From the NCBI GenBank assembly GCA_964106915.2, contig OZ066920.1: DNA of 64,000 bases; one strand, given 5' to 3'. The position numbers were made by a program, and so were the translations under genes. Positions within the stretch are counted from its first letter, which is position 1. Each line of letters starts with the position of its first letter. Origin of the DNA: Podarcis gaigeae. Taxonomy: Eukaryota. The notes under the pieces were generated by a model, which saw only the letters and a list, made by a program, of their open reading frames with translations, was not told the origin of the DNA and did not search any database. Positions 8,850 to 53,209 of the stretch are shown piece by piece.

Positions 8850-9720
8850 GAATCCCACGCTCGGCTCACGCCTGATGCAGCCGGCGCAGAGGCGCTTCGG
8901 ATCTGCAAACCCGCGAGGCAAAGCGAGTAGATCCACCGAGGAGTCACGCAATTGGCAAGAAACGGCGCGTTTCCAGAGCCGAAGCCCTGACGTCACTGGC
9001 GAGGAATGTGAGCTGGGCGTCCCCTGTTCAAGGTCTTCACACGGACTCGACGCGTCCTTTCCCCGGGCATCGAAGGGTGCAGGGAGGCGGGAGCGAGCGG
9101 GTGTCTTTCCAGCGGACAGGAGCGGCGATTGGCTGGCGCGGGGAAGAAGGGCGGGTGGGAGGCGGCTGACGTCATCGCCCATCCTTCTCCGGGGAAAAGC
9201 ACCGCCCTTTCCTTTGGGCAGAGAAGCCGGTTCTTTCCATTGAGCCGCCATTAACGCCGCTGCTTTTACAGATAGGATGAAGATCTGGAGCTCGGAGCAC
9301 GAGTTTGGGTAAGGCGAGGACGGGAGTGGTGCGCGTTCCGTCCTTGACAGCAGCAGTCCGCGCTGGCGGAGGGACAGAAAAACCGCTGGTTCTTCCGAGC
9401 TCAGTGTTGCCTACACTGGCTGGCAGCGGCTCTCCAGGGGTCTCTCTCCGTCCCATCGGGAGATGCTGGGGGTTGAGCCTGTGCAAAGGAGCTGCTTTGG
9501 ACAGTGAGCTACAGCCCTTCTCTAGCTGAGCTATGGAGCTTCCTATGGAAGGGAAAACGAATAAAATGCCCTTCTTCCCTTCTTCGTTTCCGCTTGGTAT
9601 ACAACTCGTGCTTTTTGGTCACCGGGCGAGGACGTCGGTAACATCCTGTCCCGGCGCGCTTGCTCCCTCACCAAGGGCTTTAAAGGCTTCAACATGATCT
9701 GTCGTGGGTTTGCGCTTGCT
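8850..9720. promoter_or_regulatory. CpG island / PRELID3A promoter
   Basis: Two perfect CRE palindromes TGACGTCA (8988-8995, 9167-9174); inverted CCAAT boxes (ATTGG at 8951 and 9128); GC box GGGCGG near 9149; YY1-like GCCGCCATT at 9244-9252. Boundaries approximate. Confidence 0.75.
9277..9308 (+). CDS. PRELID3A: PRELID3A (SLMO1) coding exon 1
   Basis: ATG AAG ATC TGG AGC TCG GAG CAC GAG TTT GG = MKIWSSEHEF(G); donor GG|GTAAGG; in a CpG island. Confidence 0.95.
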
Positions 9721-12736: not shown

Positions 12737-12985
<249 letters not shown>

Positions 12986-13219: not shown

Positions 13220-13444
<225 letters not shown>

Positions 13445-14467: not shown

Positions 14468-14538
14468 ATAACACTTACAAATCTTATATCAGTTGATGAA
14501 AGGTTGGTATATACGCCACACCCTGAGAACCCGGAAAA
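14468..14538 (+). CDS. PRELID3A: PRELID3A coding exon 4
   Basis: 71 nt, [23 protein letters not shown](K); donor AA|GTAAGT. Not in the ORF track. Confidence 0.96.
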
Positions 14539-14568: not shown

Positions 14569-14787
<219 letters not shown>

Positions 14788-16829
14788 TAAAACCTAAAAC
14801 TCAAATGTTTAAGTGCATTATGCTAGCATTGGTATCCCATAAGCCCAGGGTACTCTCAATTATACACAATTCACTGTAAGACTTCAGGTCAGATAATGAC
14901 TTTTCTTGTACTTGTGATGGTCTGTAGAGCCAGTTGTGTATTCTCAGTATTTCCTTTTAAGATTCAAAACCATGTAAGGTATGAAGTCAGGAAAAGTGAT
15001 TGTTGTCTCTCACTGAGACAACAGCAGCTTAGAGCTAGAATGGGGGTAGGGCTGATAGTGTCTGGTTGTGTGATCAGATTAGTCTTTCTTTCAGCTTGCA
15101 GTTCACAGAATCTCTTCTCAGGTTAGCTATTGGCTTACACAGTAGGTTGCTTGAGCCAAATAGGTTAAATGGGAAGCGGGCAAATTGCCTCCTTACCCTT
15201 TTCAGTGCTGAAAGCAGAGGAGAGAACTAAGGAGATGTCATATCTGAACTTTCCCTCATAACCCAGACACTTAATATGTACAGATGTCTCTTGTTTTCTA
15301 CTGTGTACGAAATGGTGGGTGTGAGCACATGTTCTAGTTGTCCTATTTGTAGTGTTGGAAAGGGAACTTATTCCACTTCTGATGGACAATAAACCAAATG
15401 CATACATAGGCTGTTAGTAGCAGAATAGGGGATAGATGAAAAGGAACTGTTCCCCTAAATGCTATGGGGGAAGAAGTTCTGCCATTACACAGACTTCTGG
15501 CTGTGCAGTGGAACTTTCCATTCCTTTCCTTGTGTGCCCTCAAATTAAATTTGTATACTGTTCTTCATGCATAGATCTCAGGGCGGTTCACAGCATTAAC
15601 CTGTTCTGGGAATTCCCTCAACCCTCCAGAGCATACTTTATATGCAAGCACTCCATGCATTAAAAGATACAGGAAGCTGAACTCCTGACATCTTTCTCTG
15701 GCCCTCACCTCCCTCCTTGCCTTTCCTGCAGCTAGAAAACAACTATCCTGTTGGAGTAAAGATTATTTTCCCCCTTGCCTAAATGCAGCTGGGATGGGGA
15801 TGGTCAATCCTGCCTCCACATGTGTTGGTTCATCACCATGCTCTAAAGCACCCTCCCCATGCTGCGGTTAGGTTTGTAAAAAGGTTCCTAGTGACTCTGA
15901 CCTAATCGTGGCAGGCAAGGGGAGTGTTGTGTGTGGTGTGAGAGAGAGCATGGCATGGCCATGCCCACTGCTGACACAGGGCCCTCAGAAATGGGCTATA
16001 AGAGAACGTGACAGGCCCATCCCTGTTCTCAGCCTGCAACAATTCAGCATGCTACACAATAAACCCTTTATTAAGTTCCATGGGACTTCTGTGGGTACAT
16101 GGTTGGGATTTGACTATAAAACAGCAAATGAATAGCTCAACCTTATAAAGAGTATTATTAAGGGGGAAATGAGCATTTCAAGTATTGTAATCCTAAACAA
16201 ATATTTCTGTTCTCAGTCCTCCATGACTTCTGCACTTGTACAACAATAGATTACCATTACATTACAGGTCTCATTCGGGTGCTTTATTGTTTCTTCTTCG
16301 TTCTCTTTTAATGCTGTATAATGCAGCCTGTTTTAACTAAGTTTCCTTACAGGTGATCCCTCTCTCTTTACCTTTTCAACTTAGGGCCACTTCACACTGG
16401 CGTACTACCAGATTTCTAGGCAGAAGTTGCTCTATAGGGATCTGGTAGCATGTCAAGAGATCCCAAGTCTAGGATGAGATGCATCTGTCAGAAGCATGCA
16501 TGCTCAGCTTGCTTTTACCTAACTTATTCTACTGGGATGCCTATTTGTGTGTCTTCAGCATCCTGCTTTGGCACTCAGTTAAACCTTTACATGGTATAAT
16601 TGCTTGTTACCAATATTTGATAAGCGTGGTGCTCAACTAAGTCAAACTCAAGATAGGCTTAGTCATAACAGTTACATCCATTCACTTTCAGTAGGTTTAC
16701 TTGGACTTAGTTGGATATCACTCTCAGTTTACAATGCTTGATTTTCCTGTAGGCTCTTGAGATTTACAAGACTGTGATGGTGGAATAACTTTTTGTCATA
16801 AGCTGTACATCTTTTCTGTGTTACTCCAG

Positions 16830-16883
16830 GGGTGGGATGCTATTGAGTGGACAATTCAACATTCTGACAGTGTTCTAAGATAG
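16830..16883 (+). CDS. PRELID3A: PRELID3A proximal terminal coding exon (6a), giving a 172-aa protein
   Basis: Acceptor ttactccag; GWDAIEWTIQHSDSVLR-stop, like human PRELID3A GWAAIEWIIEHSESAVS. Total CDS 519 nt. Confidence 0.92.
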   Translation, partial: GWDAIEWTIQHSDSVLR

Positions 16884-17794
16884 CAGTCTCTTTCTACAGC
16901 TGCATTTTGTACTAATTAGTGGTAATACCAGCATTTGTTACCTTGGTACAGCATTTCAGCTTCTAGCAAATCTGTGCATGTTGTTGTCATGTTACTTGAA
17001 AGCCTGCATGCCTCATATATATACACACATTGCATATAGAGGAACAGCACTCTTATTCTTTAACTCTGGAATTTGGAGGCGTCCATACTGTCTAATGCTT
17101 TGACGCAGGAAAAGGTTCTTAAGAACCTGCATGTGTGGGCCACTAATAAGGCCCACCTTCTGTTCTTTGGTAAATCTCTTTTGAGTAAGTGGAATACTGT
17201 TAGAAGAACTGTTGCATCTTGGCCCCAGAGTTTTTTGGGAAGTAGGTGAAGCTCTGAACAACCAGTCCTCTTGATCCAATGCATGGATGCTTTGGGGTGA
17301 AATACTTGAGGTTGTTAACTAGTTCACACTACTGCTGGACTTAGCCTACATTATGGCAGTTCTTGCCTATCAGTGTAGAAATACAGTCCCATCACTGCTT
17401 GGACAGAAGGGTTTTTGTTTAAAAGAAAGCAGTTTATGAAGTCCCAATTAGAACATTTGCACCTGTTTCCTTGGTCCTTGTTGGTTTTTGCTTTTGAGGC
17501 AGCTTAAAATCCGTTCAAAAAGAATGCAAAAAGAAGAAACTGGTTTTCAAAAGTGCCAGCTATTAAGCTTTATTGTCGCTCAGCGCATTTTGGAACTGTC
17601 ATTCCTCCCTCTTGGTGCCTGAGAGGCAGCTGCATTTATGTAAGTTGCTTCAGAAACTCCAAGATTGATCCTGAAGAAGGAACGTCTGTTCTGAAACACA
17701 TTGTACTATCATAAACTTCAGCAGTTGGCACTTGTGAGAATTGGGTTCTACTTTTTCTCTTCTCTGCATTATTTCTAGTGTCTGGGCCTTCCTT

Positions 17795-17865
17795 TGTTTA
17801 GTCATTTAGTCGTGCCCAACTCTTCGTGACCCCATGGACCAGAGCATGCCAGGCACTCCTGTCTT
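17795..17865 (-). mobile_element. BovB (RTE) LINE extreme 3' end
   Basis: tttagtcgtgcccaactcttcgtgaccccatggaccagagcatgccaggc is the reverse of the BovB-type 3' terminus. Confidence 0.7.
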
Positions 17866-18660
17866 ACTTTATTTTAATAAGGCAGGAATCATGCAAAACC
17901 TTTTGGCTGCACATTTTTGTTATGAGCACCAGCCTCACTCTCCTCTCCCTGCATTTTGTGAGGGGAGGTTAGAAGTGTTCACTTGCAGTTTTGCCCCCAA
18001 CATGGCCAACTGTGGTTTACTTGTTTGCAAAACCAGGATTGGATCCTGGATGTGGGGGAAGATGAATTGAACATATCAGTTTGTTTTCTGATCCTGTTAT
18101 AGCAAACTACAATTTGTTGCAGACTAGAAGTTGAAATAGCTTCTCTTCCTTCACATGTAAATGGGGAACACGGGGAAATATATGAACAACAAACCATGAT
18201 TCATTTTTTCACATCTAAAATCCAAGCTTTTATCTAAACATACACTAATATATAAATAATTTTGCTATAACAAAGCAGATGTTTTTGTCTAAATGCATTG
18301 TTTTAAGAGGCATTGCTAGCATCTGTTTGACTTGCGAGGAACTTCAGTGACCACCTTTTTCGTTCCTTGAGCTTGACTGCCAAGCTTGGAAACCCTCAAT
18401 TTTCATTTGCAGAATACAGTTACCAAACATGCCTTAGTGTTGTATAATACTTAACTACTCCCAATTTTGGAGTGTGTGTATATATTACAAAAAAAAGTAA
18501 TAATAGTAAACTCTCACTGTATGTTTTCAGTTTTACCATTAAGCCTGTGAAATGTTTCAGAGTTTAAAATTTTATGCTCTCAATCGTTTGTTAAGTAGTA
18601 ACCACTGAAATTATGTCCAGTTCTTAACTCTCATTCTGTTTGTTCAGTGTGCTACCACCA

Positions 18661-18679
18661 TGTACGTAAATATATTAAA
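18661..18679 (+). terminator. Candidate polyadenylation signal of the PRELID3A proximal isoform
   Basis: ATTAAA at 18674-18679 preceded by TGTA, at the end of an AT-rich UTR-like segment. Confidence 0.35.
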
Positions 18680-19751
18680 AGGTGCATGCTTTAATTGGAA
18701 ATATGCTTGCTCAAGTCATATACTAATATGCTGTTTTATGGTACAACAGAAACTCAGTAAACCAATCCTCTGTCAGATTGTTTTTGCTAGTTCCGTGCAT
18801 GTTAAAAAGAACCCCGGTCTTTTTGGTCCAGCATTTTTTTTTTAAAGGCTTGCCAGATGTCTATGGGAAGCAAATAAGTAAGTCATCAGCCCAATAGACC
18901 ACTCTAAATAAGGTCATTTCAAACTCAACAAAATTGTGCAATGTGCTCAGTTACTATATAAACGAATGACTAGTCCTCCCAAGAAACGCTGGCCAGACTG
19001 GATCAAACTTGACATCTGCTCAATTATGTCACATGCAGCTGTATATATTGTTGTTCCTGAAATAATTACTGGCATGGGGGAGTCTGATGGGGACTTTTCC
19101 CATTCAGATCATGGTGAGTGGGTGGAAAGATAAGCCTCCTCTCCCTACTGGTTGCCTTCCCAGTAAGAATCTGTCTCCCTGTGAATGTAATATTTAAGAT
19201 GCATACTACATATTAGGCAAATGTCTAGTTTGGTCCTAAAAAACCCACAGAGTTCCACCCTCTCATTTAAAGAAGCTGCAACCTAGTTCACCCCACCAAT
19301 GTGCTTAGAATCTACTCAAACCAAGCTGCCATTTCATTTCTTAGAAGCCCCAACACTTGTATTTAGTGTTATAGCATGGAGGTTTGTTGATCAGAAGCAC
19401 TTGGTGCAATAATTCCTGTTAGTTGCTATCTCCCATAGCAATCCTGTGAATTTCTTCATTTGACATGTCATATGTCTGTTATTAGTGGGGCCCTTTTTTA
19501 TTCTTATCTAATGCTTTGATTTTTAAATCCAACGTGTGCAGTTTCTAATGCTCAGAACATCATTCAGTTGAAGGATTGGGCTAAAGGTGGTTAGTTCTGA
19601 CCCGAGGCCAGGAATGGAAAACACTTCAAACTAAATGGTGTTTTCAAAAGTAACAAATAATTGAAGAAATTCAAATAATTCTGGCCAAGTGCTTTGGGTC
19701 ATATGCACACTACAGTCTTTTCTGCAGGAAATCATCCAGTAACAATTACTA

Positions 19752-19940
19752 TATAGTCCAGTAGCACCTTAGAGACCAACTAAGTTTGTTCTTGGTATGA
19801 GCTTTCTTGTGCATGCACATGAAAGCTCATACCAAGAAGAAATTTAGTTGGTCTCTAAGGTGCTACTGGACAATTTTTTAAAAATTTTTTATATATATTT
19901 CTACTGCGTCAGACCAACATGGCTACCTACCTGAATCTAG
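19752..19940. mobile_element. Penelope-like element remnant containing a 116-bp palindrome
   Basis: gtagcaccttagagaccaac...gaaagctcat...gttggtctctaaggtgctac, with tail cagaccaacatggctacctacctg; 8-bp flanking repeat aattacta (19744-19751 and 19941-19948). Confidence 0.7.
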
Positions 19941-21850
19941 AATTACTAGAATTGTTTGGAGAAAAACATGGTTGTGATATTCTTAGAAGCCCAGTATGAG
20001 AATACAGTGTAGATAAGCCCAACGGCTGTTTCTTCAATCTATTGGTTCATTACACTTTTTATTTCAAAACTAAGGGTGACTTCCAGTTAACTTGTTCCAT
20101 CAGCACAAGGATTTTCACTTGCAGAAGGAAACTTCCCCCTATTCTTTCACTGTGCGTGCCCCATGCCCTCCCCAAATCTGCTTTATAGGGTTGGGGGTAC
20201 AGCAGAACAGATTTAGGGGGGGTGCCAGGGAAAGGAGAGGGGGTTAGTTCTGTTGTGCATATGGAAATCTGCACACTGACAGAGCAAGCTAGTTGCTTTG
20301 TCACAGTTTAGAAACAACAAATGCAAATAATATAGCCATCTCTCTCTCTTCCAGGAGTGTTGACCTGAGCTGTTAAGTTTACAGATTTCAACTGAGCACA
20401 TTTGTATCCAGAAAGATTATGTAATTGTCATTTAATCCAGTATGTTCTGTTTCAATTAAAACAAGCATCTATATATATATAAAATAAGTTGGTAGTTAAA
20501 GCAGTCATGGTGTAGTACAGGCTTAAAACTAACAGCAATTTGGCTCGAAATGTTAAGTTTTAAGCTATTTAGTATTCTGTACAAATACCGTGTTCAGGCT
20601 TTTCATAATGCAGATGTGTGCACAGTTTCACTGTATATTTATGTTTCAAAGAAATTAGCTATAGTCCAGCTAATAAGAGGAGAGGCGGTTCTTGAACAAA
20701 GGTATCTTTTGATCACATGCTAAGTGGCCTTTTGCATCTGGCCAAGTGATTAGGCTCCTAGCCTGAAAACTTATGGAGGCTCTCACTTTTTTGTTGAGTT
20801 TCTCTACTTGAGCTTACTGAGGTTTTCTCCTCAGTTCCACTAGTGCAAGCAATTTTAACTATGCATAAGAACTTACCCCACCTGCACACCCTCTAAATCT
20901 GCCCTGAAGGGTTGAGGGCAAACTCAGAAATATTTAGAGGGTGTGAAGGTTGAAGCAGTTCCATTGTGCAGCCAGGAGTGCTTGCACTGGTGCAACTATT
21001 GAGTTGAATACTTCCCAGCATGTGTTTCAAGCTCTTCTTATTTAGGTTTGCCTTCTGTCGCTGGGGTGTAGCTGGTCTTTAGGCCCAGTTAAACTGAATT
21101 CTTGCAGAAGCGGTGCTCTTGCTTCCTACGTTGCTCTGTACTGAGCATCAGTGATGGTAATTTAGTGTTTCATGATAGAGAGTAAACAGGATGGGAAAGA
21201 AACCATAAACTATAAGTTCATTAATAACGTTCATTAGGACTTGTAACAACTTTTCCATTGCTAGGATGAAGCGGAAGAAACTGAAGGGGGGAAATATTAT
21301 TGGTGGGAGAAGGGCTAGTATTAGGCCTCATGTCTGTTCTGTTGCAATCTTACCATGGTAATGGAGGAAGCCACAGAAATGTGATAGAAAAAATTTCAGG
21401 TTGTTCAGAGGCATGCTAGGGATAAGAAGCAAATGATGCTTTGCACTTTGGGAAAAGTGGGTAGTCAAAACTCTCTCTAGCACTGATCCAAGTACAACAG
21501 TCTCTTTGTAATTGTGCCTTGCTAGACAGATCTAGCATTTGTACTCTGCAAAAGAGCTAGCTTGTGGTCTTGTAACTTTGTTGGCCTATTATTACTAAGA
21601 AAAATGTATTGTCTAAGCAGATCACCCTTCAATTTAAGGTTTTCTTGTTACAGAAGCAAAGGTGGATTAGAATGAAATAACCTTGTCGTACAAATTCAGT
21701 GGCACAATTCATTATGATACATTCATAATTCAGAAGACAACAAAGCAGTTTGCTTTGGAAGATCTTTTGGTGTCTGACAGAGGAAAGATTTAGAACTTTA
21801 ACATCAATGTATCTGGTCAATCCACTTAGCTCTTGTGCCTTCTTTAACAG

Positions 21851-21943
21851 GGTCGAGAAGCCTTGGAATGGGTGATTGGCGAACTAACTTCGACGCGAGA
21901 GAGCATGAAGTCCGCAATGGCAGCAGCTTCAGCGGAGGACTGA
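21851..21943 (+). CDS. PRELID3A: PRELID3A alternative distal terminal coding exon (6b), PRELID3B-like C-terminus, giving a 185-aa protein
   Basis: Acceptor cttgtgccttctttaacag, phase 0. Encodes GREALEWVIGELTSTRESMKSAMAAASAED-stop, resembling PRELID3B [9 protein letters not shown]...MAAAAFAEK as recalled. Confidence 0.8.
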   Translation, partial: GREALEWVIGELTSTRESMKSAMAAASAED

Positions 21944-24900
21944 TGGAACTGTGACAGAACTTTATTTTTCCATTATATTTTCTCCTTGCCAGGATGGATA
22001 TTCCATTGTTTTTTATTTAGAAATATATATGTTTATATAATGAAATTTTACAGGTCAGAAGCAATCCCCCCCCCGCACCAATTTTTAAGCCTTTGTAGGG
22101 CCCTCTATTTGTCCACAGTGTAAGTTAACAGATTATTATTATTTTTTTTTGGCTTTCCCGTGGCCTCTAGTTACAAGTGCCCAAATTTGATAGAGTATAG
22201 TGACCTTAAGTCCTACTGAGGTTAAATGGATGTGGAACTGGCAGAGCAGATTGAAGATCGACATCTACATAAGTACCAAACTGTGCCTTGATCAGAGCTG
22301 AGAGAATAGACTTCCCATCTTATATAACCATTTTCTTGTACTTGAAATGTATTTATTTATTTCTTTAAAAGTGCAGCTGCCGTTCTTATTCTGTAAATGA
22401 CAAATAGGTACAGAAAGCACTGGGGATCTCTCTCTCTCTCTCTCTACAGGCTAGATAAGTATAGTGAGGAGGTGAAATGTGATGGCACAGGAGGTTGACT
22501 GACACCTGATGTGATCGTCTATGTGGTTCTGCAACACAACCTTCCTTTTACTTAGTGGAGCCTAAAAGAAGATCTGAACAACCTTCCCTGAAATGAAGGT
22601 TGGTGTGCAACAAAGTTCCATGGTGGATTGTGCCCTTTGTTGGAGGCTGGAGATCTCCTCCTGAGACTTTGGCTTTGTGGATATTAATTCTTCTTTGCAC
22701 TGTTCAAATGCAGATTCTGAACAAGGTGTTCTAGCACGTTACCTCCTAGTATTTATACTGAAACCACTGAGAGCAACCATTTTGTTGTGGTAAAAATGGC
22801 TTGTCAATTTTTGTTTTTATTTTTCAGTAGCTAGTTTATTTCCATATATGTGAATATACCCTCTTCACTTATTATGTGAAGACAATTGATACCTCAGTGG
22901 GAAGTACTAGGAAACTTATTTTCTATATGTAATGGGCATATGTTTGAAGTACTTAGTTGTGTAATTCATTTCTTTTAGCAATGGATACAAGACCATAAAG
23001 GATATTTATGGCCCACCCCACATTTCACACCCATCTTCTGGCACTCTGTTTAGCAGTTCCAGGGAGGAGACTGTTTCATAGTGGTAGGGGGAATGTGATG
23101 TTGTGAAGCACAACCGCCTCTCCCACCAAGCCAACAGCTTTCATCATTGAGCAAGTTCAAACTCCATTTCTGACCTCTGATTTCAATGGAATTTTCTTCT
23201 GTACAACATCTAGAAGTAGTTCTATTGAAGCCGATACGGAGAGAGCACTTGCTTAAAACTAGGTTATGATGGTAGTAGCCCTAGATGTTCCACATAGAAG
23301 ATTAGAGGAAAAAGAAGAGTGAATAGCAAGCTTTTCAATGGAATTATTTTGGAAGCATGCAGGTCCATGTAACTTCATAAGTAATTCATGGTGTTACATT
23401 TTGTGTGATTCAAGTTTTGTTAACAGTTCATTCATTGATGAAAGCCAACCTCCGTGGAACAGAAAGCTGCAAACATCTATAAATTAATGCACTTCCAAGC
23501 ATTGTAAAGTTCAAAACTGTAGTTTAAAACTGTGCAAGATGAAAAGTTGGAAAGCTCCTGATTTACAGAGAACGACAAATATATCGGGCATGAACACAAG
23601 ATGTCTGCCTACAATCCAGTATGATGAAAACAATTCCTTTCTCTTCAAACTTTGCTTGCGGTCTATCTCTTCTGAATATTTTGCAGAAAGCTGAAAGAAA
23701 AAACTGAAGGCTGAAATCTTACTTGTTTAATCTTGGGGACTGGGCACGGTGTGGAATTTGTGACAAAAATAAGAAAGATGCCAAAATTCAGCATACTAGA
23801 ACTCTTATGTGGAAGCAAAACAACATGCCAAGAAAATTTAGGATGTAGCTAAGCTGCATGTGCATCTAAGTGGAATGGCGATGAATTGTTACTGGAGCCT
23901 TTTTTGCTCCCTGCCTGCCTGTCCCCCCCGCCCCCACCGGCCTGAATAACCCTTGGCATTAACAATTTTTAAGCCCTGGCAGAAAAAGAGCTTTTTTTAA
24001 TATGACCAAAGCATTTTTCTTCCGTTTCAATATATTTTGTACAAAGAATAGTTGGATTACAAAGAGCCTGCCTTCTGTGAAGGGTATCAGGCCACCACGT
24101 CATGGAAGAGGTGGTGTGGCTGAGGCAGAGAAGTTCAGCATTCTAGCCCATATGTGTGTTCATTTCAAGAAGTGGACCAGTTAACCAAAGTCACCAGCTT
24201 TCATATGGAATCCTTCACCCCCCCCCCTTTATTTTGTGTGAAGGTAAACTTGTCCGTGCTTATTCATGTGCACTTCTTTCTTCTGTCTTCTATAGAATCG
24301 TGGTTGAGTTTCCTTTAATAGTCCTACTCCTGTCTCCTAAAGGCGATTAAACACTGTTTCTTACCTTTGTTCTTTCTTGTTCCTTCCACGGATCTTGGCT
24401 GATGGAACTCTCATATGACTGCAGCTCCACAGACTGTCACTTGGTGTCTTGCTTGGTGCGATGTTGTCTCTTAAGGCTGTTCTCTTAGTTCCCTAGTGGA
24501 TCTTGGAGCCCACAAACCTCCGGGCAGGCAAGCTTGGCACTATTGCTTTTATATTGTTTGCTTACCAAATAATGACCACAGTCTTACATTTTCCTGGCTA
24601 ACACATATTTATTAGATATTTAACATGGCACAGGAATATGGGCTCCTTTGGGAGGAAGAGCAGGATAGAATCTAATAATAAAATCATGGAAAATAAAAAT
24701 ACGTTGCATTTTCACTCCTTAGCATGTGAAAATAGAGCATGTGCTCTTTCGATCATGGCTGCCACTACCCTTGCTTCTTGCCCCTTCACATCTTCAGTAA
24801 AAGCACTCCATGCTTTTCCTTTGTCCTTGAAGGCCCCAGCATTCTCTGTTCTAGGTGACTGGAAATCAAACCTTTTTATATCTAGTAGCTTATCTACCTT

Positions 24901-34183: not shown

Positions 34184-34442
34184 TCAGATCTCATTGATAG
34201 TCCTCTCAGAAGGGCAATACTCCGAGGTGCCTGGGGAGGACATGTAGAATGACTGGGTTTTCCTTTTTAATCTGGCTCGCTTGTTAGCCAGGGAGAGGCT
34301 GCGGCGGCTTGAATTGATGATTTCCGAAATGAACTTTTTGCAGTCCACACATACTTCCATGGTGCTCCAGTCCTCCATTAGCTCTTTTGGAAACAGTGCT
34401 TCTTCATCTGATTTATCTACAGACTTGGACTTTGAGGATAAC
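34184..34442 (-). CDS. SPIRE1: SPIRE1 last coding exon
   Basis: [42 protein letters not shown]...PSERTINEI-stop. Confidence 0.97.
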
Positions 34443-34616
34443 CTGAAAACAAAGCAACAATTCTATTCTTATTAGGGTTATTTAGTTTTCCAATTGTACT
34501 AGAGAGGTGAACTCTGTGCACTCTAAAATAACAAATCTGTCTCTCACATGTCTTTTTGCTTCCTAACATACTGTGTCAGGGGAGAGAGGTGTTTCTTGTG
34601 GCCAGATATGATTATT

Positions 34617-49307: not shown

Positions 49308-51797
49308 CTAGAAGAAAGAAAATAGGTCATTTAGATGTTCTTGTTGATCAATTGCTTCCACTTTAATAAGCAGACAACACCTACAATACTTTATTTAACA
49401 AGTTCCAATTAAAAGAAATGCTTTAGCATTTCTACTTTCCAGTTATTAGCAAATTTTTCATATGCCATGATCAGAGTTTTTATCAACACAAGGTACTGAA
49501 AAACACTAGTATATATAGTCATTGGATCACATTAATAAAAATATTGCTAGAAGACAACAGATTACAAAATCTTGTGGTTGTCCCCCCACCAACAGCTTTG
49601 CTCATGTACCTCTTTGCTCTGTTTCCATAAATTTTCTTATGTATATACTCAACAAATATTACTTATAAAGTATAACATGATTACTTAGCTGGTATTTCTA
49701 CCCAATATAGCATTTTTCTTATTTCTTTAAATTGTATTGGTAATTTACTTTCAATTTATTATAACATGAAATTCAACCTAAGGTCTTATTTACATGATAT
49801 ACAATCCAAGCTGTATTCTCCTGGCTATAAGCATTGACTAAATCACTGTCCCCAGCCAGTAACAGGAGCTTTACATTTTTCTTTTATGGCATCTTCTTTC
49901 AAAAATGGAATTTCAAGTTAAATAAGCTATAGCCCAGAAATTACACTCAAGCCCTTTCACTGATTGCTGCTATTGTTTAAATACTTTATCACCAAATCAT
50001 GACATGGCATGGTGGAAATTTGCACGTCCATATTCCAAAGCAAACTCACTTGATACACAAACAAAGATTTCTGTGCAGGTCATAACGTGGTTCACTTTGG
50101 AATCCAGATCCACAACAAATACTACAAGGTGGTTCAAGAGCTTCATTTTAACTTTTTTAAAAAAGGTACAAGCCATTCTGAGCAGCTACAAAGTACAGCT
50201 CCTGTTGCATGGATTAAAAATGGAGCTGCAAAGGCCCCCGGAACAATAGTTTGTGATTATGTGTCATCACTCTGAAGAAAATTATATGGCAGGGGGTGGG
50301 GATGACATGATTGTCTCTATGGGCTGAAACACACTTTTTTTAAAAAAAAAAGTGAAACTGGCATAAACCAAATTTGAACTATCTATCCATCTGTAATCAA
50401 GACTTCTATGTCAAAACTTTAGAGAAGAGAGCTGTAATTAATTCAGTTTCTGTTTAAGTTAAATAGGAGTTAACTTTAACTGAGACACTTCTTGTTAGCA
50501 TTATATATAAACAGTGTTAAAACCTTGATGATTTTATCACAATGCATTTTGTAATAAAAATATTCTGGTACTGTAAGTTTGCCTGTTCCAACTCCTCAGT
50601 AGCTGAGGGTGGGGTGAGAAAGAGGTGAATGCTTCTGTTACAAGCATGCCTGACCTGGAAATTTTTATAGGCATCAGGAATGCTACCTGGCTTACTGGTG
50701 CATGGAAGTTTACCTGCTTGATGGCGCGTCTCCTTGCAATTGCCTCGTTAGCCAAACAAACTGAATCCCCATAGAACATCCCTTAAGTCGCCTGTTCAAG
50801 TATTGCTTTGACCTTGAGTCCTAGCAAAGGTTCACGGAAACCTACTTAGGTTTTGTTCACTAAATTTTAGAACTGGGTTGTGAATCTTAAAAAGAAATGT
50901 GGAAAACCTCACATTTTGTCAAGACTGATTCATTACTTGTTTTATTTAGGGGAGGGGATACAGCATTATAACCCAACTGGAAAGTATCACTGAATACAGA
51001 CAAGAGCAAAAAGAAGGTTGAACTCTGATAGACCTGTGACAGATAGAAACTGTTATTCTACAAGAAATGCTATGTGCTGTTATTCAGCCTGAGCTTCCAG
51101 AATTTGGAAGGGCCATAAAGTTCCCTGGGACCAGAACAATCAGACAAAACCATGCCAGCACTCCCAAAGACACCAAACATGGACAGGCAAATATTGCAGT
51201 GCCTCCTCTTCACTCAGGAGTTTAAAGAATGTGCAGTGCTGGGCACAGGAATCACACGCAACTTATTGAAAGACACAGCCCAAAGTCTCTCCCGTCTCCA
51301 CTCTAGTTCCTGAGCCACCAACCTTCAAGGGATGCAGGGCCACCAGCTTTGCTGAGAAGCCAGACACCTCCATATGATCATCATCTAACAGTGGCTATTC
51401 CACAAGGCAGAAGGGAAGAGAAGGGATATAGACCAGTTCATTGGCAGAACTGAGAGACCAATAACTTTGGCTACGCCTGTTCTTGAACTTCTTCTACCCC
51501 CCCCCCCCCAATGATTATTAGAGTAACTTGTAACTTAAACCTAAGTTTGCTTATTTCCTTCTCCCTTAGTCCTTTTCCTTTTTGTGTCATGTCTTTTTAG
51601 ATTTTAAGCCTGGGGGCAGCAACTTGCTTGTATTGATCTCTAATTGCTCTGCAAACCTTTTCTGGCTTAAGGTAAGATTTAGAATTATTCAAAAAACAAA
51701 TATATAATACCTTGAACAAAAAAAAGTCTGACAAAATAGAAATTAATCAACAAAAATGTAAATCCTGAAAAGAGGTTCAGACCAACCAGCACCTTAC

Positions 51798-52492: not shown

Positions 52493-53209
52493 CCTATTTT
52501 TCACTCTCTGCCCAAATGCATATTCTGAATCACACACACACACACACACACACTCCCTTCATGGGGTGAAGCAAGTGCCTACTGTCAGCTCCACATGGCC
52601 GGAGGGCAACAGGGAAGCAAACAAGATTGGCTACTAGGTGGGGAAGCCACCCCTGATACTTCTGCCCCCTGCCCAAGAATCCTTGAAAATCAAAAGACTT
52701 TGAGCTCCAGCAACTGCTCTGCAATTACAAACTAAAAAACTGAAGGTCTCCAACCTGGTGCACATGGGCACCAAGGAAGGCTTGGGAGGGAGTCAGGTTC
52801 ATGATTTCTGTTTACGAAATATCCCAGGCCCTGATTGGATGGGTGTTGTAAATAATCTATTCCAATTATATAAATCTGTGCTTCTATTTTTAGAGGCAAA
52901 TCTACTTTGATTTTGTGAAACTGTGGATAAACAAATCATCCATCCAATATTGCTAAAAATAGTTTTAGCATATCAGCAGCCAGCTACTTACACCTTGCAG
53001 AACCCAAAGGAAATTCACAAGGAAACATACACACAAACAGAAAATATAACAAAAAGAAAAGAAAAAAGCTCAAGGATAGCTTGAAATGCATTTTACCAGA
53101 CTATTTTTTGGTCACACTTGTAAGTATTTTCCAACTGATATGTAGTTGGGAAAAAACATTTGTTTTTTACCTTTAAATAATTCTATTACCACTTAAGATA
53201 TAGATTTTA

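What the first reader, a model, noticed from the sequence alone, without database searches (positions are those of the whole stretch)
16830..21943. PRELID3A has two alternative terminal exons, one PRELID3A-type and one PRELID3B-like, swapping the C-terminal helix of the lipid-transfer domain
Seen: after exon 5 (phase 0) there are two in-frame terminal exons, each with a good polypyrimidine-AG acceptor. 16830-16883 encodes GWDAIEWTIQHSDSVLR* and 21851-21943 encodes GREALEWVIGELTSTRESMKSAMAAASAED*. Both begin G-x-x-A-[IL]-E-W-x-I, which points to tandem exon duplication. The distal exon is missed by the ORF track and keeps several CpGs in a CpG-poor area, as expected for constrained coding sequence. 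Established: PRELID3A and PRELID3B are Ups2-like, TRIAP1-partnered phospholipid-transfer proteins of the mitochondrial intermembrane space, with a START-like fold whose C-terminal helix closes the lipid cavity. The human PRELID3B tail, as recalled, is [39 protein letters not shown]. Inference: the distal exon is the ancestral tail shared with PRELID3B (here internally shortened) and the proximal exon is the derived form used by mammalian PRELID3A. This reptile gene could switch between 172-aa and 185-aa proteins, each with its own 3' UTR, that differ in lipid handling, membrane docking or protease turnover.
Basis: partly seen in the sequence, partly recalled or inferred. Interest (0 to 1): 0.8.

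Follow-up and report, generated by a model that had tools for sequence, protein, structure and literature searches.

The report
PRELID3A two alternative last exons
This lizard's mitochondrial lipid-carrier gene PRELID3A really has two alternative stop-bearing last coding exons, but both are ancient, conserved and already in public gene models of other vertebrates, and RNA from two related species shows only the distal one in use.

Summary
After exon 5 (ends 14730, phase 0) there are two in-frame, stop-bearing exons with good acceptors: 16830-16883 (GW type) and 21851-21943 (GR type).

- The distal GR exon is the ancestral SLMO-type tail. It is the usual annotated C-terminus of PRELID3A in more than 100 birds and in crocodile, turtles, tuatara and geckos. 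Here it lacks 8 residues.
- The proximal GW exon is not a mammalian novelty. It is the nearly invariant PRELID3A tail from elephant shark to mammals, and it is intact in turtle, emu and gecko DNA.
- Both isoforms already exist as RefSeq models (emu X1/X2, elephant X2/X3; GW or GR models in geckos, a snake, turtles and ostrich).
- In four RNA or RNA-like runs from two related species, only the distal exon is covered. Stranded reads start at 21850. One 3.5-kb contig carries 493 upstream letters, the size of exons 1-5. The proximal exon has no spliced coverage.
- Only the second half of helix alpha3 is exchanged, and its invariant G-A-EW-I residues are kept.
- The proximal exon is followed by GCAUG motifs conserved from catfish to lizard, which suggests RBFOX-type tissue regulation (inference).

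Verdict: real and conserved, but not new. No earlier follow-up of this gene turned up in the scan's notes.

The parts
9277..9308 (+). PRELID3A exon 1, coding part (MKIWSSEHEF + 2 nt of the Gly codon), donor GG|gtaagg
12805..12973 (+). PRELID3A exon 2 (G)[20 protein letters not shown]...LPSIVKA
   Evidence: Pfam PRELI E 1.7e-16. 96% identical to bird and crocodilian PRELID3A.
13274..13363 (+). PRELID3A exon 3 ([30 protein letters not shown])
   Evidence: boundaries read from aaag|ATT ... AAT|gtgagt. Pfam PRELI.
14468..14538 (+). PRELID3A exon 4 ([23 protein letters not shown] + 2 nt of the Lys codon)
14628..14730 (+). PRELID3A exon 5 ([34 protein letters not shown]). It encodes the last strand and the first half of helix alpha3, and its donor is AAG|gtaggt in phase 0.
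   Evidence: AF2 models of emu and pigeon orthologues place the start of alpha3 at residue 138.
16830..16883 (+). Proximal stop-bearing exon, GW type (GWDAIEWTIQHSDSVLR*). It gives the 172-aa product and is the pan-gnathostome PRELID3A tail.
   Evidence: PDB match to human PRELID3A. Orthologous intact exons in gecko, turtle, emu, frog, catfish and camel. No spliced RNA coverage in 4 runs.
16884..17076 (+). Conserved block just after the proximal stop. It holds TACTAAT...GTG|GTAAT (16910-16926; 5'-splice-site-like and ACUAAY-like) and (U)GCAUG motifs at 16975 and 17005, with further ones at 17128 and 17280.
   Evidence: 85.5% identity with gecko over 317 nt, 88% with turtle and 83% with emu. 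The GCATG at 16976-16980 is invariant in 6 species including catfish.
18436..18788 (+). Second conserved non-coding block between the two exons. It holds ATTAAA at 18674, TGCATG at 18683 and CCAATCCTCTGTCAGATTG at 18762. It is either a candidate proximal 3' UTR or poly(A) region, or an intronic regulator.
21851..21943 (+). Distal stop-bearing exon, GR type (GREALEWVIGELTSTRESMKSAMAAASAED*). It gives the 185-aa product and is the ancestral SLMO/PRELID3B-like tail, 8 aa shorter than in tuatara, gecko and turtle.
   Evidence: PDB match to PRELID3B. Orthologues. Expressed on the + strand in relatives.
21944..24715 (+). 3' UTR of the distal isoform; the end is approximate. The first canonical AATAAA signals are at 24677 and 24692. 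Only 21944-22640 was actually laid with reads.
   Evidence: depth 4-23x in raw stranded reads as far as the end of the laid stretch (22640). The X1 contig has about 3,016 letters after 21849, which implies an end near 24.7-24.9 kb. Poly(A) signals are listed.

Best explanation
The + strand carries PRELID3A (SLMO1), a PRELI-domain phospholipid carrier of the mitochondrial intermembrane space. After exon 5 the pre-mRNA can join either of two homologous exons, each carrying its own stop codon.

- The proximal GW exon (16830-16883) gives a 172-aa protein with the tail found in PRELID3A of all jawed vertebrates.
- The distal GR exon (21851-21943) gives a 185-aa protein with the older SLMO-type tail shared with PRELID3B and invertebrate homologues. 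In this lizard it lacks 8 residues.

Both exons supply the second half of helix alpha3. Both keep its invariant G-x-x-A-x-E-W-x-I residues, so the core fold is the same. The products differ in the exposed helix end and in the tail: the GW form stops at about residue 171, while the GR form continues as a longer helix and flexible tail.

The arrangement is ancient and is already modelled in RefSeq for other species. In the lizard lineage sampled, the distal exon is the default. The proximal exon is probably included only in particular tissues. This last point is an inference from its strong conservation and from the conserved (U)GCAUG motifs 90-130 nt downstream, the classical position for RBFOX-type enhancement.

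Shown: anatomy, conservation, distal expression, and prior annotation elsewhere. Inferred: proximal use in this species, RBFOX control, and any functional difference between the two proteins.
For: Anatomy.

Family and orthology:
- Pfam PRELI hits on exons 2, 3 and 5.
- Exon 2 is 96% identical to PRELID3A of Buteo and Gavialis.
- SPIRE1 lies tail-to-tail downstream.

Distal exon is the annotated sauropsid C-terminus: more than 100 bird species, Crocodylus, Chelonia, Sphenodon, Eublepharis, Paroedura and Gekko.

Distal exon is expressed:
- Stranded raw RNA reads of X23 and X24 give depth 0 at 16650-17649 and at 20050-21649. Depth is 0.75 and 0.1 in bin 21650-21849, then 4-23x from bin 21850 onward.
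- All these reads have the first mate on the - strand, which means a + strand RNA.
- The X1 contig (3,509 nt, depth 72.8) aligns from its letter 494 at 21849. The 493 letters before that match the size of the 465-nt CDS of exons 1-5 plus a short 5' UTR.
- X1 depth over the proximal exon is 0-0.46, so that exon is not part of this contig.
- In X13 a contig ends exactly at 21849, and an unspliced contig crosses the site at lower depth.

Proximal exon is conserved:
- Intact 54-nt exons with identical acceptor tracts occur in gecko, turtle and emu.
- The block 16775-17076 is 83-88% identical to these species. That is higher than exons 4-5 (72-78%) and the distal region (68-70%).

GW tail is annotated from Callorhinchus to mammals, including emu X2, ostrich X5, Pelodiscus X2, Heteronotia X2 and Thamnophis X3.

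Both tails are annotated within a single species in emu (P0302/P0303) and elephant (P0271/P0270).

Structure: alpha3 spans residues 138-171 (GW form) or 138-190 (GR form, with pLDDT falling after about residue 175).

Motifs: the GCATG is invariant in six species, and the motif is enriched after the exon.
Against: - No read or contig shows exon 5 joined to 16830 in the four runs laid. Use of the proximal exon in this lineage is therefore not demonstrated.
- The junction 14730>21851 itself was not displayed. The 6-kb limit kept exon 5 out of the laid stretch, and the loose-end rows at 21851 were crowded out by repeats. The splice is inferred from the depth step, the strand, and the 493 unaligned upstream letters.
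- The runs come from related species (about 1.6% and about 4% diverged) of unknown tissue, not from the window's own animal.
- Within the lizard proximal exon, 5 of 7 differences from turtle change the amino acid. Coding constraint in squamates may therefore be weaker than nucleotide conservation suggests.
- RBFOX control rests on motifs only.
Confidence: 0.8

Rival explanations
1. Cassette-exon model. The proximal exon is not a terminal exon with its own poly(A) site. It is an internal 92-nt exon (16830-16921) that uses the conserved GTG|GTAAT donor and is spliced on to the distal exon. Inclusion gives the 172-aa GW protein. Its stop lies 38 nt before the junction, too close to trigger nonsense-mediated decay. 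Skipping gives the GR protein. Both mRNAs would then share the distal 3' UTR.
For: - No AATAAA occurs between 16884 and 24677; there are only ATTAAA at 18674 and 20455.
- A 5'-splice-site-like GTG|GTAAT is conserved in lizard, gecko, turtle and emu, and appears as GTG|GCAAGT in the frog.
- GCAUG motifs lie 50-100 nt beyond that site, the usual position for intronic enhancers.
Against: - No transcript evidence exists either way, because one search shows no coverage of the exon.
- Conservation continues for about 150 nt past the putative donor, and a second conserved block with ATTAAA lies at 18436-18788. Both fit a 3' UTR.
- From my own recollection, not tested here, the GW exon is the terminal exon in mammals.
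- In Ascaphus the distal exon looks dead, yet the motif is kept.
Confidence: 0.2
2. The proximal GW exon is an unused relic in this lizard lineage. The gene makes only the 185-aa GR protein, and the conservation of the block reflects some other non-coding role.
For: - Depth over 16650-17649 is zero in two deep stranded RNA runs and near zero in X1. In X13 there is only an unspliced contig at intron-level depth.
- There are three lineage-specific residue changes (E>D, A>V, S>R) relative to gecko, and the nonsynonymous to synonymous ratio against turtle is 5:2.
Against: - The reading frame, exon length (17 codons plus stop) and acceptor are intact, and the acceptor tract is identical to gecko, turtle and emu.
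- The block shows 85-88% identity over 170-320 nt, where the introns do not align at all.
- GW isoforms are modelled by RefSeq in two other squamates, Heteronotia X2 and Thamnophis X3.
- The tissues of the four runs are unknown.
Confidence: 0.12
3. The distal exon is not part of PRELID3A. It would be a fragment of a PRELID3B retrocopy, or an exon of another transcript or of the SPIRE1 antisense region.
For: - The peptide is closer to PRELID3B than to human PRELID3A.
- It lies 5 kb beyond the proximal stop, towards SPIRE1.
Against: - Homology stops exactly at a polypyrimidine-AG acceptor, which is not retrocopy-like.
- The same exon sits at the same place in turtle, emu and gecko PRELID3A loci.
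- Hundreds of annotated PRELID3A proteins join ...SSNARK to GR(D/E)ALEW.
- The RNA is on the + strand and starts at the acceptor, and one contig carries 493 nt of upstream sequence.
- The SPIRE1 stop is 12 kb away, at about 34187.
Confidence: 0.01

Closest known systems
RefSeq/UniProt isoform models of PRELID3A in other vertebrates. Examples: emu XP_025950116.1 (GR tail) and XP_025950117.1 (GW tail); elephant XP_010585171.1 (GR tail) and XP_023399771.2 (GW tail); Heteronotia binoei X2 and Thamnophis elegans X3 (GW); Eublepharis and Paroedura X2 (GR).
   Same: They share the same gene and the same exon-5 donor. They carry the same two alternative C-terminal peptides, in the same genomic order where I could read the locus (turtle, emu, gecko).
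   Different: The window's distal exon lacks 8 residues (KLNTEFE plus one S) that gecko, tuatara and turtle have. The proximal peptide has three private changes. These are computed models, and no paper in the library describes or tests the switch.
PRELID3B (SLMO2) and invertebrate Slowmo
   Same: The distal exon has their tail type (GR-A-EWVI-KLN-E-E-L...MAAA...). The PRELI fold and the TRIAP1/Mdm35-type partnership are established for the family (PMC6408443, PMC4515122).
   Different: The body of the window's protein is PRELID3A, not 3B: exon 2 is 96% identical to PRELID3A against about 80% to 3B-like proteins. As far as these searches show, PRELID3B has no GW exon.
RBFOX-regulated alternative exons and alternative last exons in general
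   Same: It is a small, strongly conserved alternative exon with conserved (U)GCAUG about 90-130 nt downstream. Its flanks are more conserved than the constitutive exons.
   Different: No binding, tissue or knock-down data exist. It is not known whether the motifs lie in an intron or in a 3' UTR.

Membership tests
PRELI/MSF1 domain family (Pfam PF04707) | Sequence match to the PRELI profile above the curated threshold | tested here: met
   Exon 2 alone scores 60.9 bits (cut-off 27). Exons 3 and 5 score 21 bits each, at profile positions 58-82 and 107-142. Full-length orthologues P0302 and P0195 score 180-185 bits and cover the profile to position 155-156 of 157.
PRELID3A orthologue (as against PRELID3B) | Highest identity to named PRELID3A proteins, and conserved neighbourhood (SPIRE1 tail-to-tail downstream) | tested here: met
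   the best matches to exon 2 (96%) are PRELID3A of Buteo and Gavialis; the SPIRE1 C-terminal exon lies on the - strand at 34462-34187. That SPIRE1 neighbours PRELID3A in human 18p11 is from my own knowledge.
PRELID3A orthologue (as against PRELID3B) | GW-type C-terminal exon (GWDAIEWIIQNSES...), found in PRELID3A of all jawed vertebrates sampled | tested here: met
Alternative last exons (two mutually exclusive stop-bearing 3' exons) | Two exons, each with an acceptor and an in-frame stop, downstream of one shared donor | tested here: met
Alternative last exons (two mutually exclusive stop-bearing 3' exons) | Both exons used in mature transcripts of this lineage | tested here: inconclusive
   the distal exon is used in 4 of 4 runs and the proximal exon is not seen. 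Tissues are unknown and only 4 runs of related species were laid.
Alternative last exons (two mutually exclusive stop-bearing 3' exons) | A separate cleavage and polyadenylation site for each exon | tested here: inconclusive
   Distal: AATAAA at 24677 and 24692 fits the X1 contig length. Proximal: no AATAAA, only ATTAAA at 18674 inside a conserved block. No 3'-end data are available.
RBFOX-regulated exon | Conserved (U)GCAUG within about 300 nt downstream of the exon | tested here: met
   the GCATG at 16976-16980 is invariant in lizard, gecko, turtle, emu, frog and catfish. A second motif lies at about +122 to +134 in the five tetrapods and at +86 in catfish.
RBFOX-regulated exon | RBFOX binding, and RBFOX-dependent inclusion of the exon | not testable with these tools
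   No CLIP or perturbation data are available. No paper links PRELID3A or SLMO1 with RBFOX.
Ups2/SLMO-type TRIAP1-dependent lipid transfer protein | Complex with TRIAP1 and phospholipid transfer activity | not testable with these tools
   Known for the human proteins (PMC4515122, PMC6408443). Here only the fold is inferred, from AF2 models of the emu and pigeon orthologues (pTM 0.83 and 0.77).

The most novel reading that the evidence does not exclude
PRELID3A has carried a regulated two-way switch of the outer half of its lid helix alpha3 for more than 400 million years. The GW exon would be included under RBFOX-type control in excitable tissues, and the ancestral GR exon used elsewhere. Lineages would have since flipped or lost the default: mammals mostly GW, sauropsids mostly GR, with the GR exon dead in a frog and not found in catfish or camel. 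The two forms would differ in membrane docking, lipid release or turnover of this intermembrane-space lipid carrier. No paper in the library describes this.
Probability: 0.3. Interest if true: 0.5.

Novelty: already known. Interest (0 to 1): 0.25.

Why it matters
For genome annotation, non-mammalian PRELID3A needs both 3' exons modelled. Many public models instead read through the exon-5 donor into the intron (P0001, P0002 and P0007).

For biology, almost all work on SLMO1/PRELID3A uses the 172-aa mammalian GW form. Birds and reptiles mostly express and annotate a form with the PRELID3B-like tail. Both exons have been kept for hundreds of millions of years, which suggests that the end of alpha3 and the tail have a separate, selectable function. 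That could be tested with the existing TRIAP1 lipid-transfer assays.

As a discovery it is modest. The isoforms are already in RefSeq, and alternative last exons are a common device.

Tried and rejected
1. A retrocopy or foreign-gene origin of the distal exon was rejected.

2. I could not show the junction 14730>21851 directly. The 6-kb limit of read laying kept exon 5 off the stretch. The loose-end table was filled by two repeats (17794-17865 and 19757-19819) that attract thousands of reads.

Exons were searched one by one by reference. Full-length comparisons used database proteins only.

4. The look-up of encoding contigs found nothing on record for P0267, P0261, P0270, P0302, P0370 and P0271. 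As a result I obtained no non-gekkotan squamate locus, no elephant locus and no GW transcript contig. The genomic order of the two exons in a mammal is therefore unverified. Whether the 8-aa deletion is shared beyond the window's close relatives is also unverified.

5. No GR-type exon was found within 8 kb downstream in catfish or 10 kb downstream in camel (tblastn E<0.2). This does not prove absence.

6. A rough dN/dS on the proximal exon (5 nonsynonymous to 2 synonymous against turtle) rests on too few sites to use.

7. Literature searches for PRELID3A/SLMO1 isoforms, terminal exons and RBFOX gave nothing relevant.

8. Proteins that looked human or primate (P0059, P0339, P0381) were only listed by the searches and were not pursued.

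Full report
**What is in the window**

The + strand carries PRELID3A. The coding exons are 9277-9308, 12805-12973, 13274-13363, 14468-14538 and 14628-14730. They total 465 nt, or 155 codons, and exon 5 ends in phase 0 at AAG|gtaggt.

Two exons can follow it.
- 16830-16883 encodes GWDAIEWTIQHSDSVLR*. Its acceptor is ttttctgtgttactccag|.
- 21851-21943 encodes GREALEWVIGELTSTRESMKSAMAAASAED*. Its acceptor is gccttctttaacag|.

The products are 172 and 185 aa. The distal exon has 7 CpG in 93 nt (observed/expected 1.04), against 0.11-0.23 around it. Pfam PRELI matches exons 2, 3 and 5. SPIRE1 ends tail-to-tail at about 34187 on the - strand.

Each exon was searched by reference, and all full-length work used database proteins.

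**Identity of the two tails**

phmmer against PDB pairs the proximal peptide with human PRELID3A (8ag0_A and 4xzv_B, GWAAIEWIIEHSESA). It pairs the distal one with PRELID3B (6i4y_B, [21 protein letters not shown]).

An exhaustive search with exon 2 gave full-length relatives. A word search with the C-terminal part of one of them followed (P0005, Passer montanus PRELID3A X1).

That search showed that the annotated PRELID3A ends ...[43 protein letters not shown]. This holds in more than 100 bird species and in Crocodylus porosus, Chelonia mydas, Sphenodon and geckos.

The 'PRELID3B-like' distal exon is therefore the ordinary annotated last exon of sauropsid PRELID3A. The window's version lacks 8 residues that tuatara, gecko and turtle have. 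For example, tuatara reads GREALEWVIGKLNTEFEELTSSTRESMKSAMAAASMEH.

I fetched genomic loci for green turtle (L001), emu (L002), the tailed frog Ascaphus (L003), a catfish (L004), a camel (L005) and Gekko kuhli (L006).

Between exon 5 and the GR exon, three species carry an intact 54-nt GW exon:
- turtle and emu: GWDAIEWIIQNSESALS*, identical in the two
- gecko: GWDAIEWTIQHSESALS*

The 21 nt before the acceptor are identical in lizard, gecko, turtle and emu.

The block 16775-17076 is 85.5% identical to gecko over 317 nt, 88% to turtle and 83% to emu. It is better conserved than exons 4-5 (72-78%) or the distal region (68-70%).

A word search with emu isoform X2 (P0302) found the GW tail annotated widely:
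- elephant shark (GWDAIEWIIQNSESAVI), teleosts and many frogs
- Pelodiscus X2, ostrich X5 and emu X2
- the gecko Heteronotia X2 and the snake Thamnophis X3
- mammals

The GW exon is thus the pan-gnathostome PRELID3A tail, not a mammalian derivation.

Both tails are modelled within one species in emu (P0303 and P0302) and in elephant. In elephant these are P0270...[29 protein letters not shown], and P0271...KKGWAAIEWIIQTSEGAVS.

In Ascaphus the GR exon survives only as a probable relic after a good acceptor. It reads G*DAM--VMDKLNSDIG..., with a stop at codon 2 and the invariant E-W lost (tblastn E 4e-4). I found no GR exon within 8-10 kb downstream in catfish or camel.

**Expression**

The run search was seeded with the distal exon and the start of its UTR. 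It listed 14 small, RNA-like contig sets of two related species, labelled organisms A and B. From the shares of words held, A is about 1.6% diverged. From the laid contigs, B is about 4% diverged. The search also listed raw stranded RNA-seq runs of organism A.

Laying four runs on 16650-22640 gave these results.
- In both raw runs (X23 and X24) depth is 0 over 16650-17649, which includes the proximal exon, and 0 over 20050-21649.
- Depth is 0.75 and 0.1 in bin 21650-21849. From bin 21850 onward it is 4-23x.
- Every read pair has its first mate on the - strand. In the usual stranded libraries this means a + strand RNA.
- The X1 contig of 3,509 nt (depth 72.8) aligns from its letter 494 at 21849. 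The 493 preceding letters match the size of exons 1-5 (465 nt) plus a short 5' UTR. Its remaining roughly 3.0 kb reaches about 24.7-24.9 kb, where the first AATAAA signals lie (24677 and 24692).
- X1 depth over the proximal exon is 0-0.46, so that exon is not in the contig.
- In X13 (organism B) one contig ends exactly at 21849. An unspliced contig crosses that point at half the depth, as expected for a splice branch. Over the proximal exon X13 has only an unspliced contig at intron-level depth.
- The only listed difference inside the distal exon is a synonymous C>T at 21880.

I could not display the junction itself. Exon 5 lies outside the 6-kb stretch, and the loose-end rows were taken up by two repeats.

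Conclusion: the distal isoform is real and is the default in the samples seen. Proximal use is unproven in this lineage.

**What the swap does to the protein**

AlphaFold2 models were made for the two natural isoforms: emu P0302 for the GW form and pigeon P0195 for the GR form (pTM 0.83 and 0.77). Helix alpha3 runs from residue 138 to 171 in the GW form. In the GR form it runs from 138 to 190, with confidence falling after about residue 175.

Exon 6 starts at residue 156. Only the second half of alpha3 and the tail are exchanged, not the whole helix. Pfam's PRELI profile runs to about residue 168 in both.

G156, A159, E161, W162 and I164 are invariant across GW tails, GR tails, PRELID3B and invertebrate homologues. 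The part of the helix that packs on the domain is therefore preserved. The lizard's 8-aa loss falls in the extension beyond it.

PMC6408443 describes alpha3 and the omega loop as the mobile lid of the lipid cavity, and describes the Ups2 C-terminal region as unstructured and dispensable for some activities. A difference in docking, release or turnover is plausible but untested.

**Regulation (inference)**

Just after the proximal stop lies TACTAAT..GTG|GTAAT (16910-16926). It is conserved in lizard, gecko, turtle and emu, and reads GTG|GCAAGT in the frog.

It resembles a 5' splice site. The exon might therefore be an internal 92-nt cassette spliced on to the distal exon, with the stop 38 nt from the junction. 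It might instead be a U1 or STAR-protein site.

A GCATG at 16976-16980 is invariant in six species including catfish. A second lies at about +122 to +134 in tetrapods. The 500 nt after the exon hold four TGCATG, a count reached by only 4 of 1,270 sliding windows of the 64-kb window.

Downstream (U)GCAUG is the textbook signature of RBFOX-enhanced exons; this is established knowledge and was not tested here. It would fit use of the proximal exon restricted to brain, heart or muscle. No paper links the gene with RBFOX or describes its isoforms.

**Verdict**

The feature is real, and both exons are under long-term constraint. It is an already-annotated property of vertebrate PRELID3A rather than a discovery of this window.

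New here are small points:
- the 8-aa-shorter distal tail of this lizard
- the RNA evidence that lizards, like the bird and reptile annotations, default to the GR exon
- the deep conservation of the GW exon's flanking motifs

Interest is low to moderate.

Noticed in passing
window 16910-16926: TACTAAT..TAGTG|GTAAT lies 27-43 nt after the proximal stop. It is conserved in lizard, gecko, turtle and emu, and reads GTG|GCAAGT in the frog. It looks like a 5' splice site and also fits an ACUAAY...UAAY (QKI/STAR-type) element.
   Followed up: partly
window 16975, 17005, 17128, 17280: Four TGCATG occur within 400 nt after the proximal exon. The first GCATG is invariant from catfish to lizard. The second is conserved in position in the tetrapods.
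   Followed up: partly
window 18436-18788: A non-coding block between the two exons is conserved with gecko (68% over 359 nt). Its core, GTGCATGCTTTA...TGCTTGCT and CCAATCCTCTGTCAGATT, is also conserved with emu. It holds ATTAAA at 18674. It is either a proximal 3' UTR end or an intronic regulator.
   Followed up: partly
window 17794-17865 and 19757-19819: Two short repeat fragments attract hundreds of partly matching RNA reads, with contig depths in the thousands, in all four runs. They are probably pieces of abundant, transcribed interspersed repeats. They masked the loose-end table.
   Followed up: no
L003 (Ascaphus truei) 52616-52723: This is a probable dead copy of the GR-type exon behind an intact acceptor. 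It has TAG at codon 2 and has lost the invariant Glu-Trp. The frog's GW exon at 49861-49914 is intact.
   Followed up: partly
window 34187-34462, - strand: This is the last coding exon of SPIRE1 (...[17 protein letters not shown]...SERTINEI*), tail-to-tail with PRELID3A, about 12 kb beyond the distal exon.
   Followed up: no
database proteins P0001, P0002, P0007, P0015, P0021, P0022, P0036: Many public PRELID3A models in birds, gharial, frog and mammals read through the exon-5 donor, or into unrelated sequence, after ...SSNA(R/K)K. The 3' end of this gene is often mis-modelled.
   Followed up: no
database protein P0245 (Cyrtonyx montezumae): This is a GR-type tail that begins [16 protein letters not shown]..., so the quail's distal exon has Trp at position 2, like the GW exon. 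It may be a single R>W change or a model artefact.
   Followed up: no
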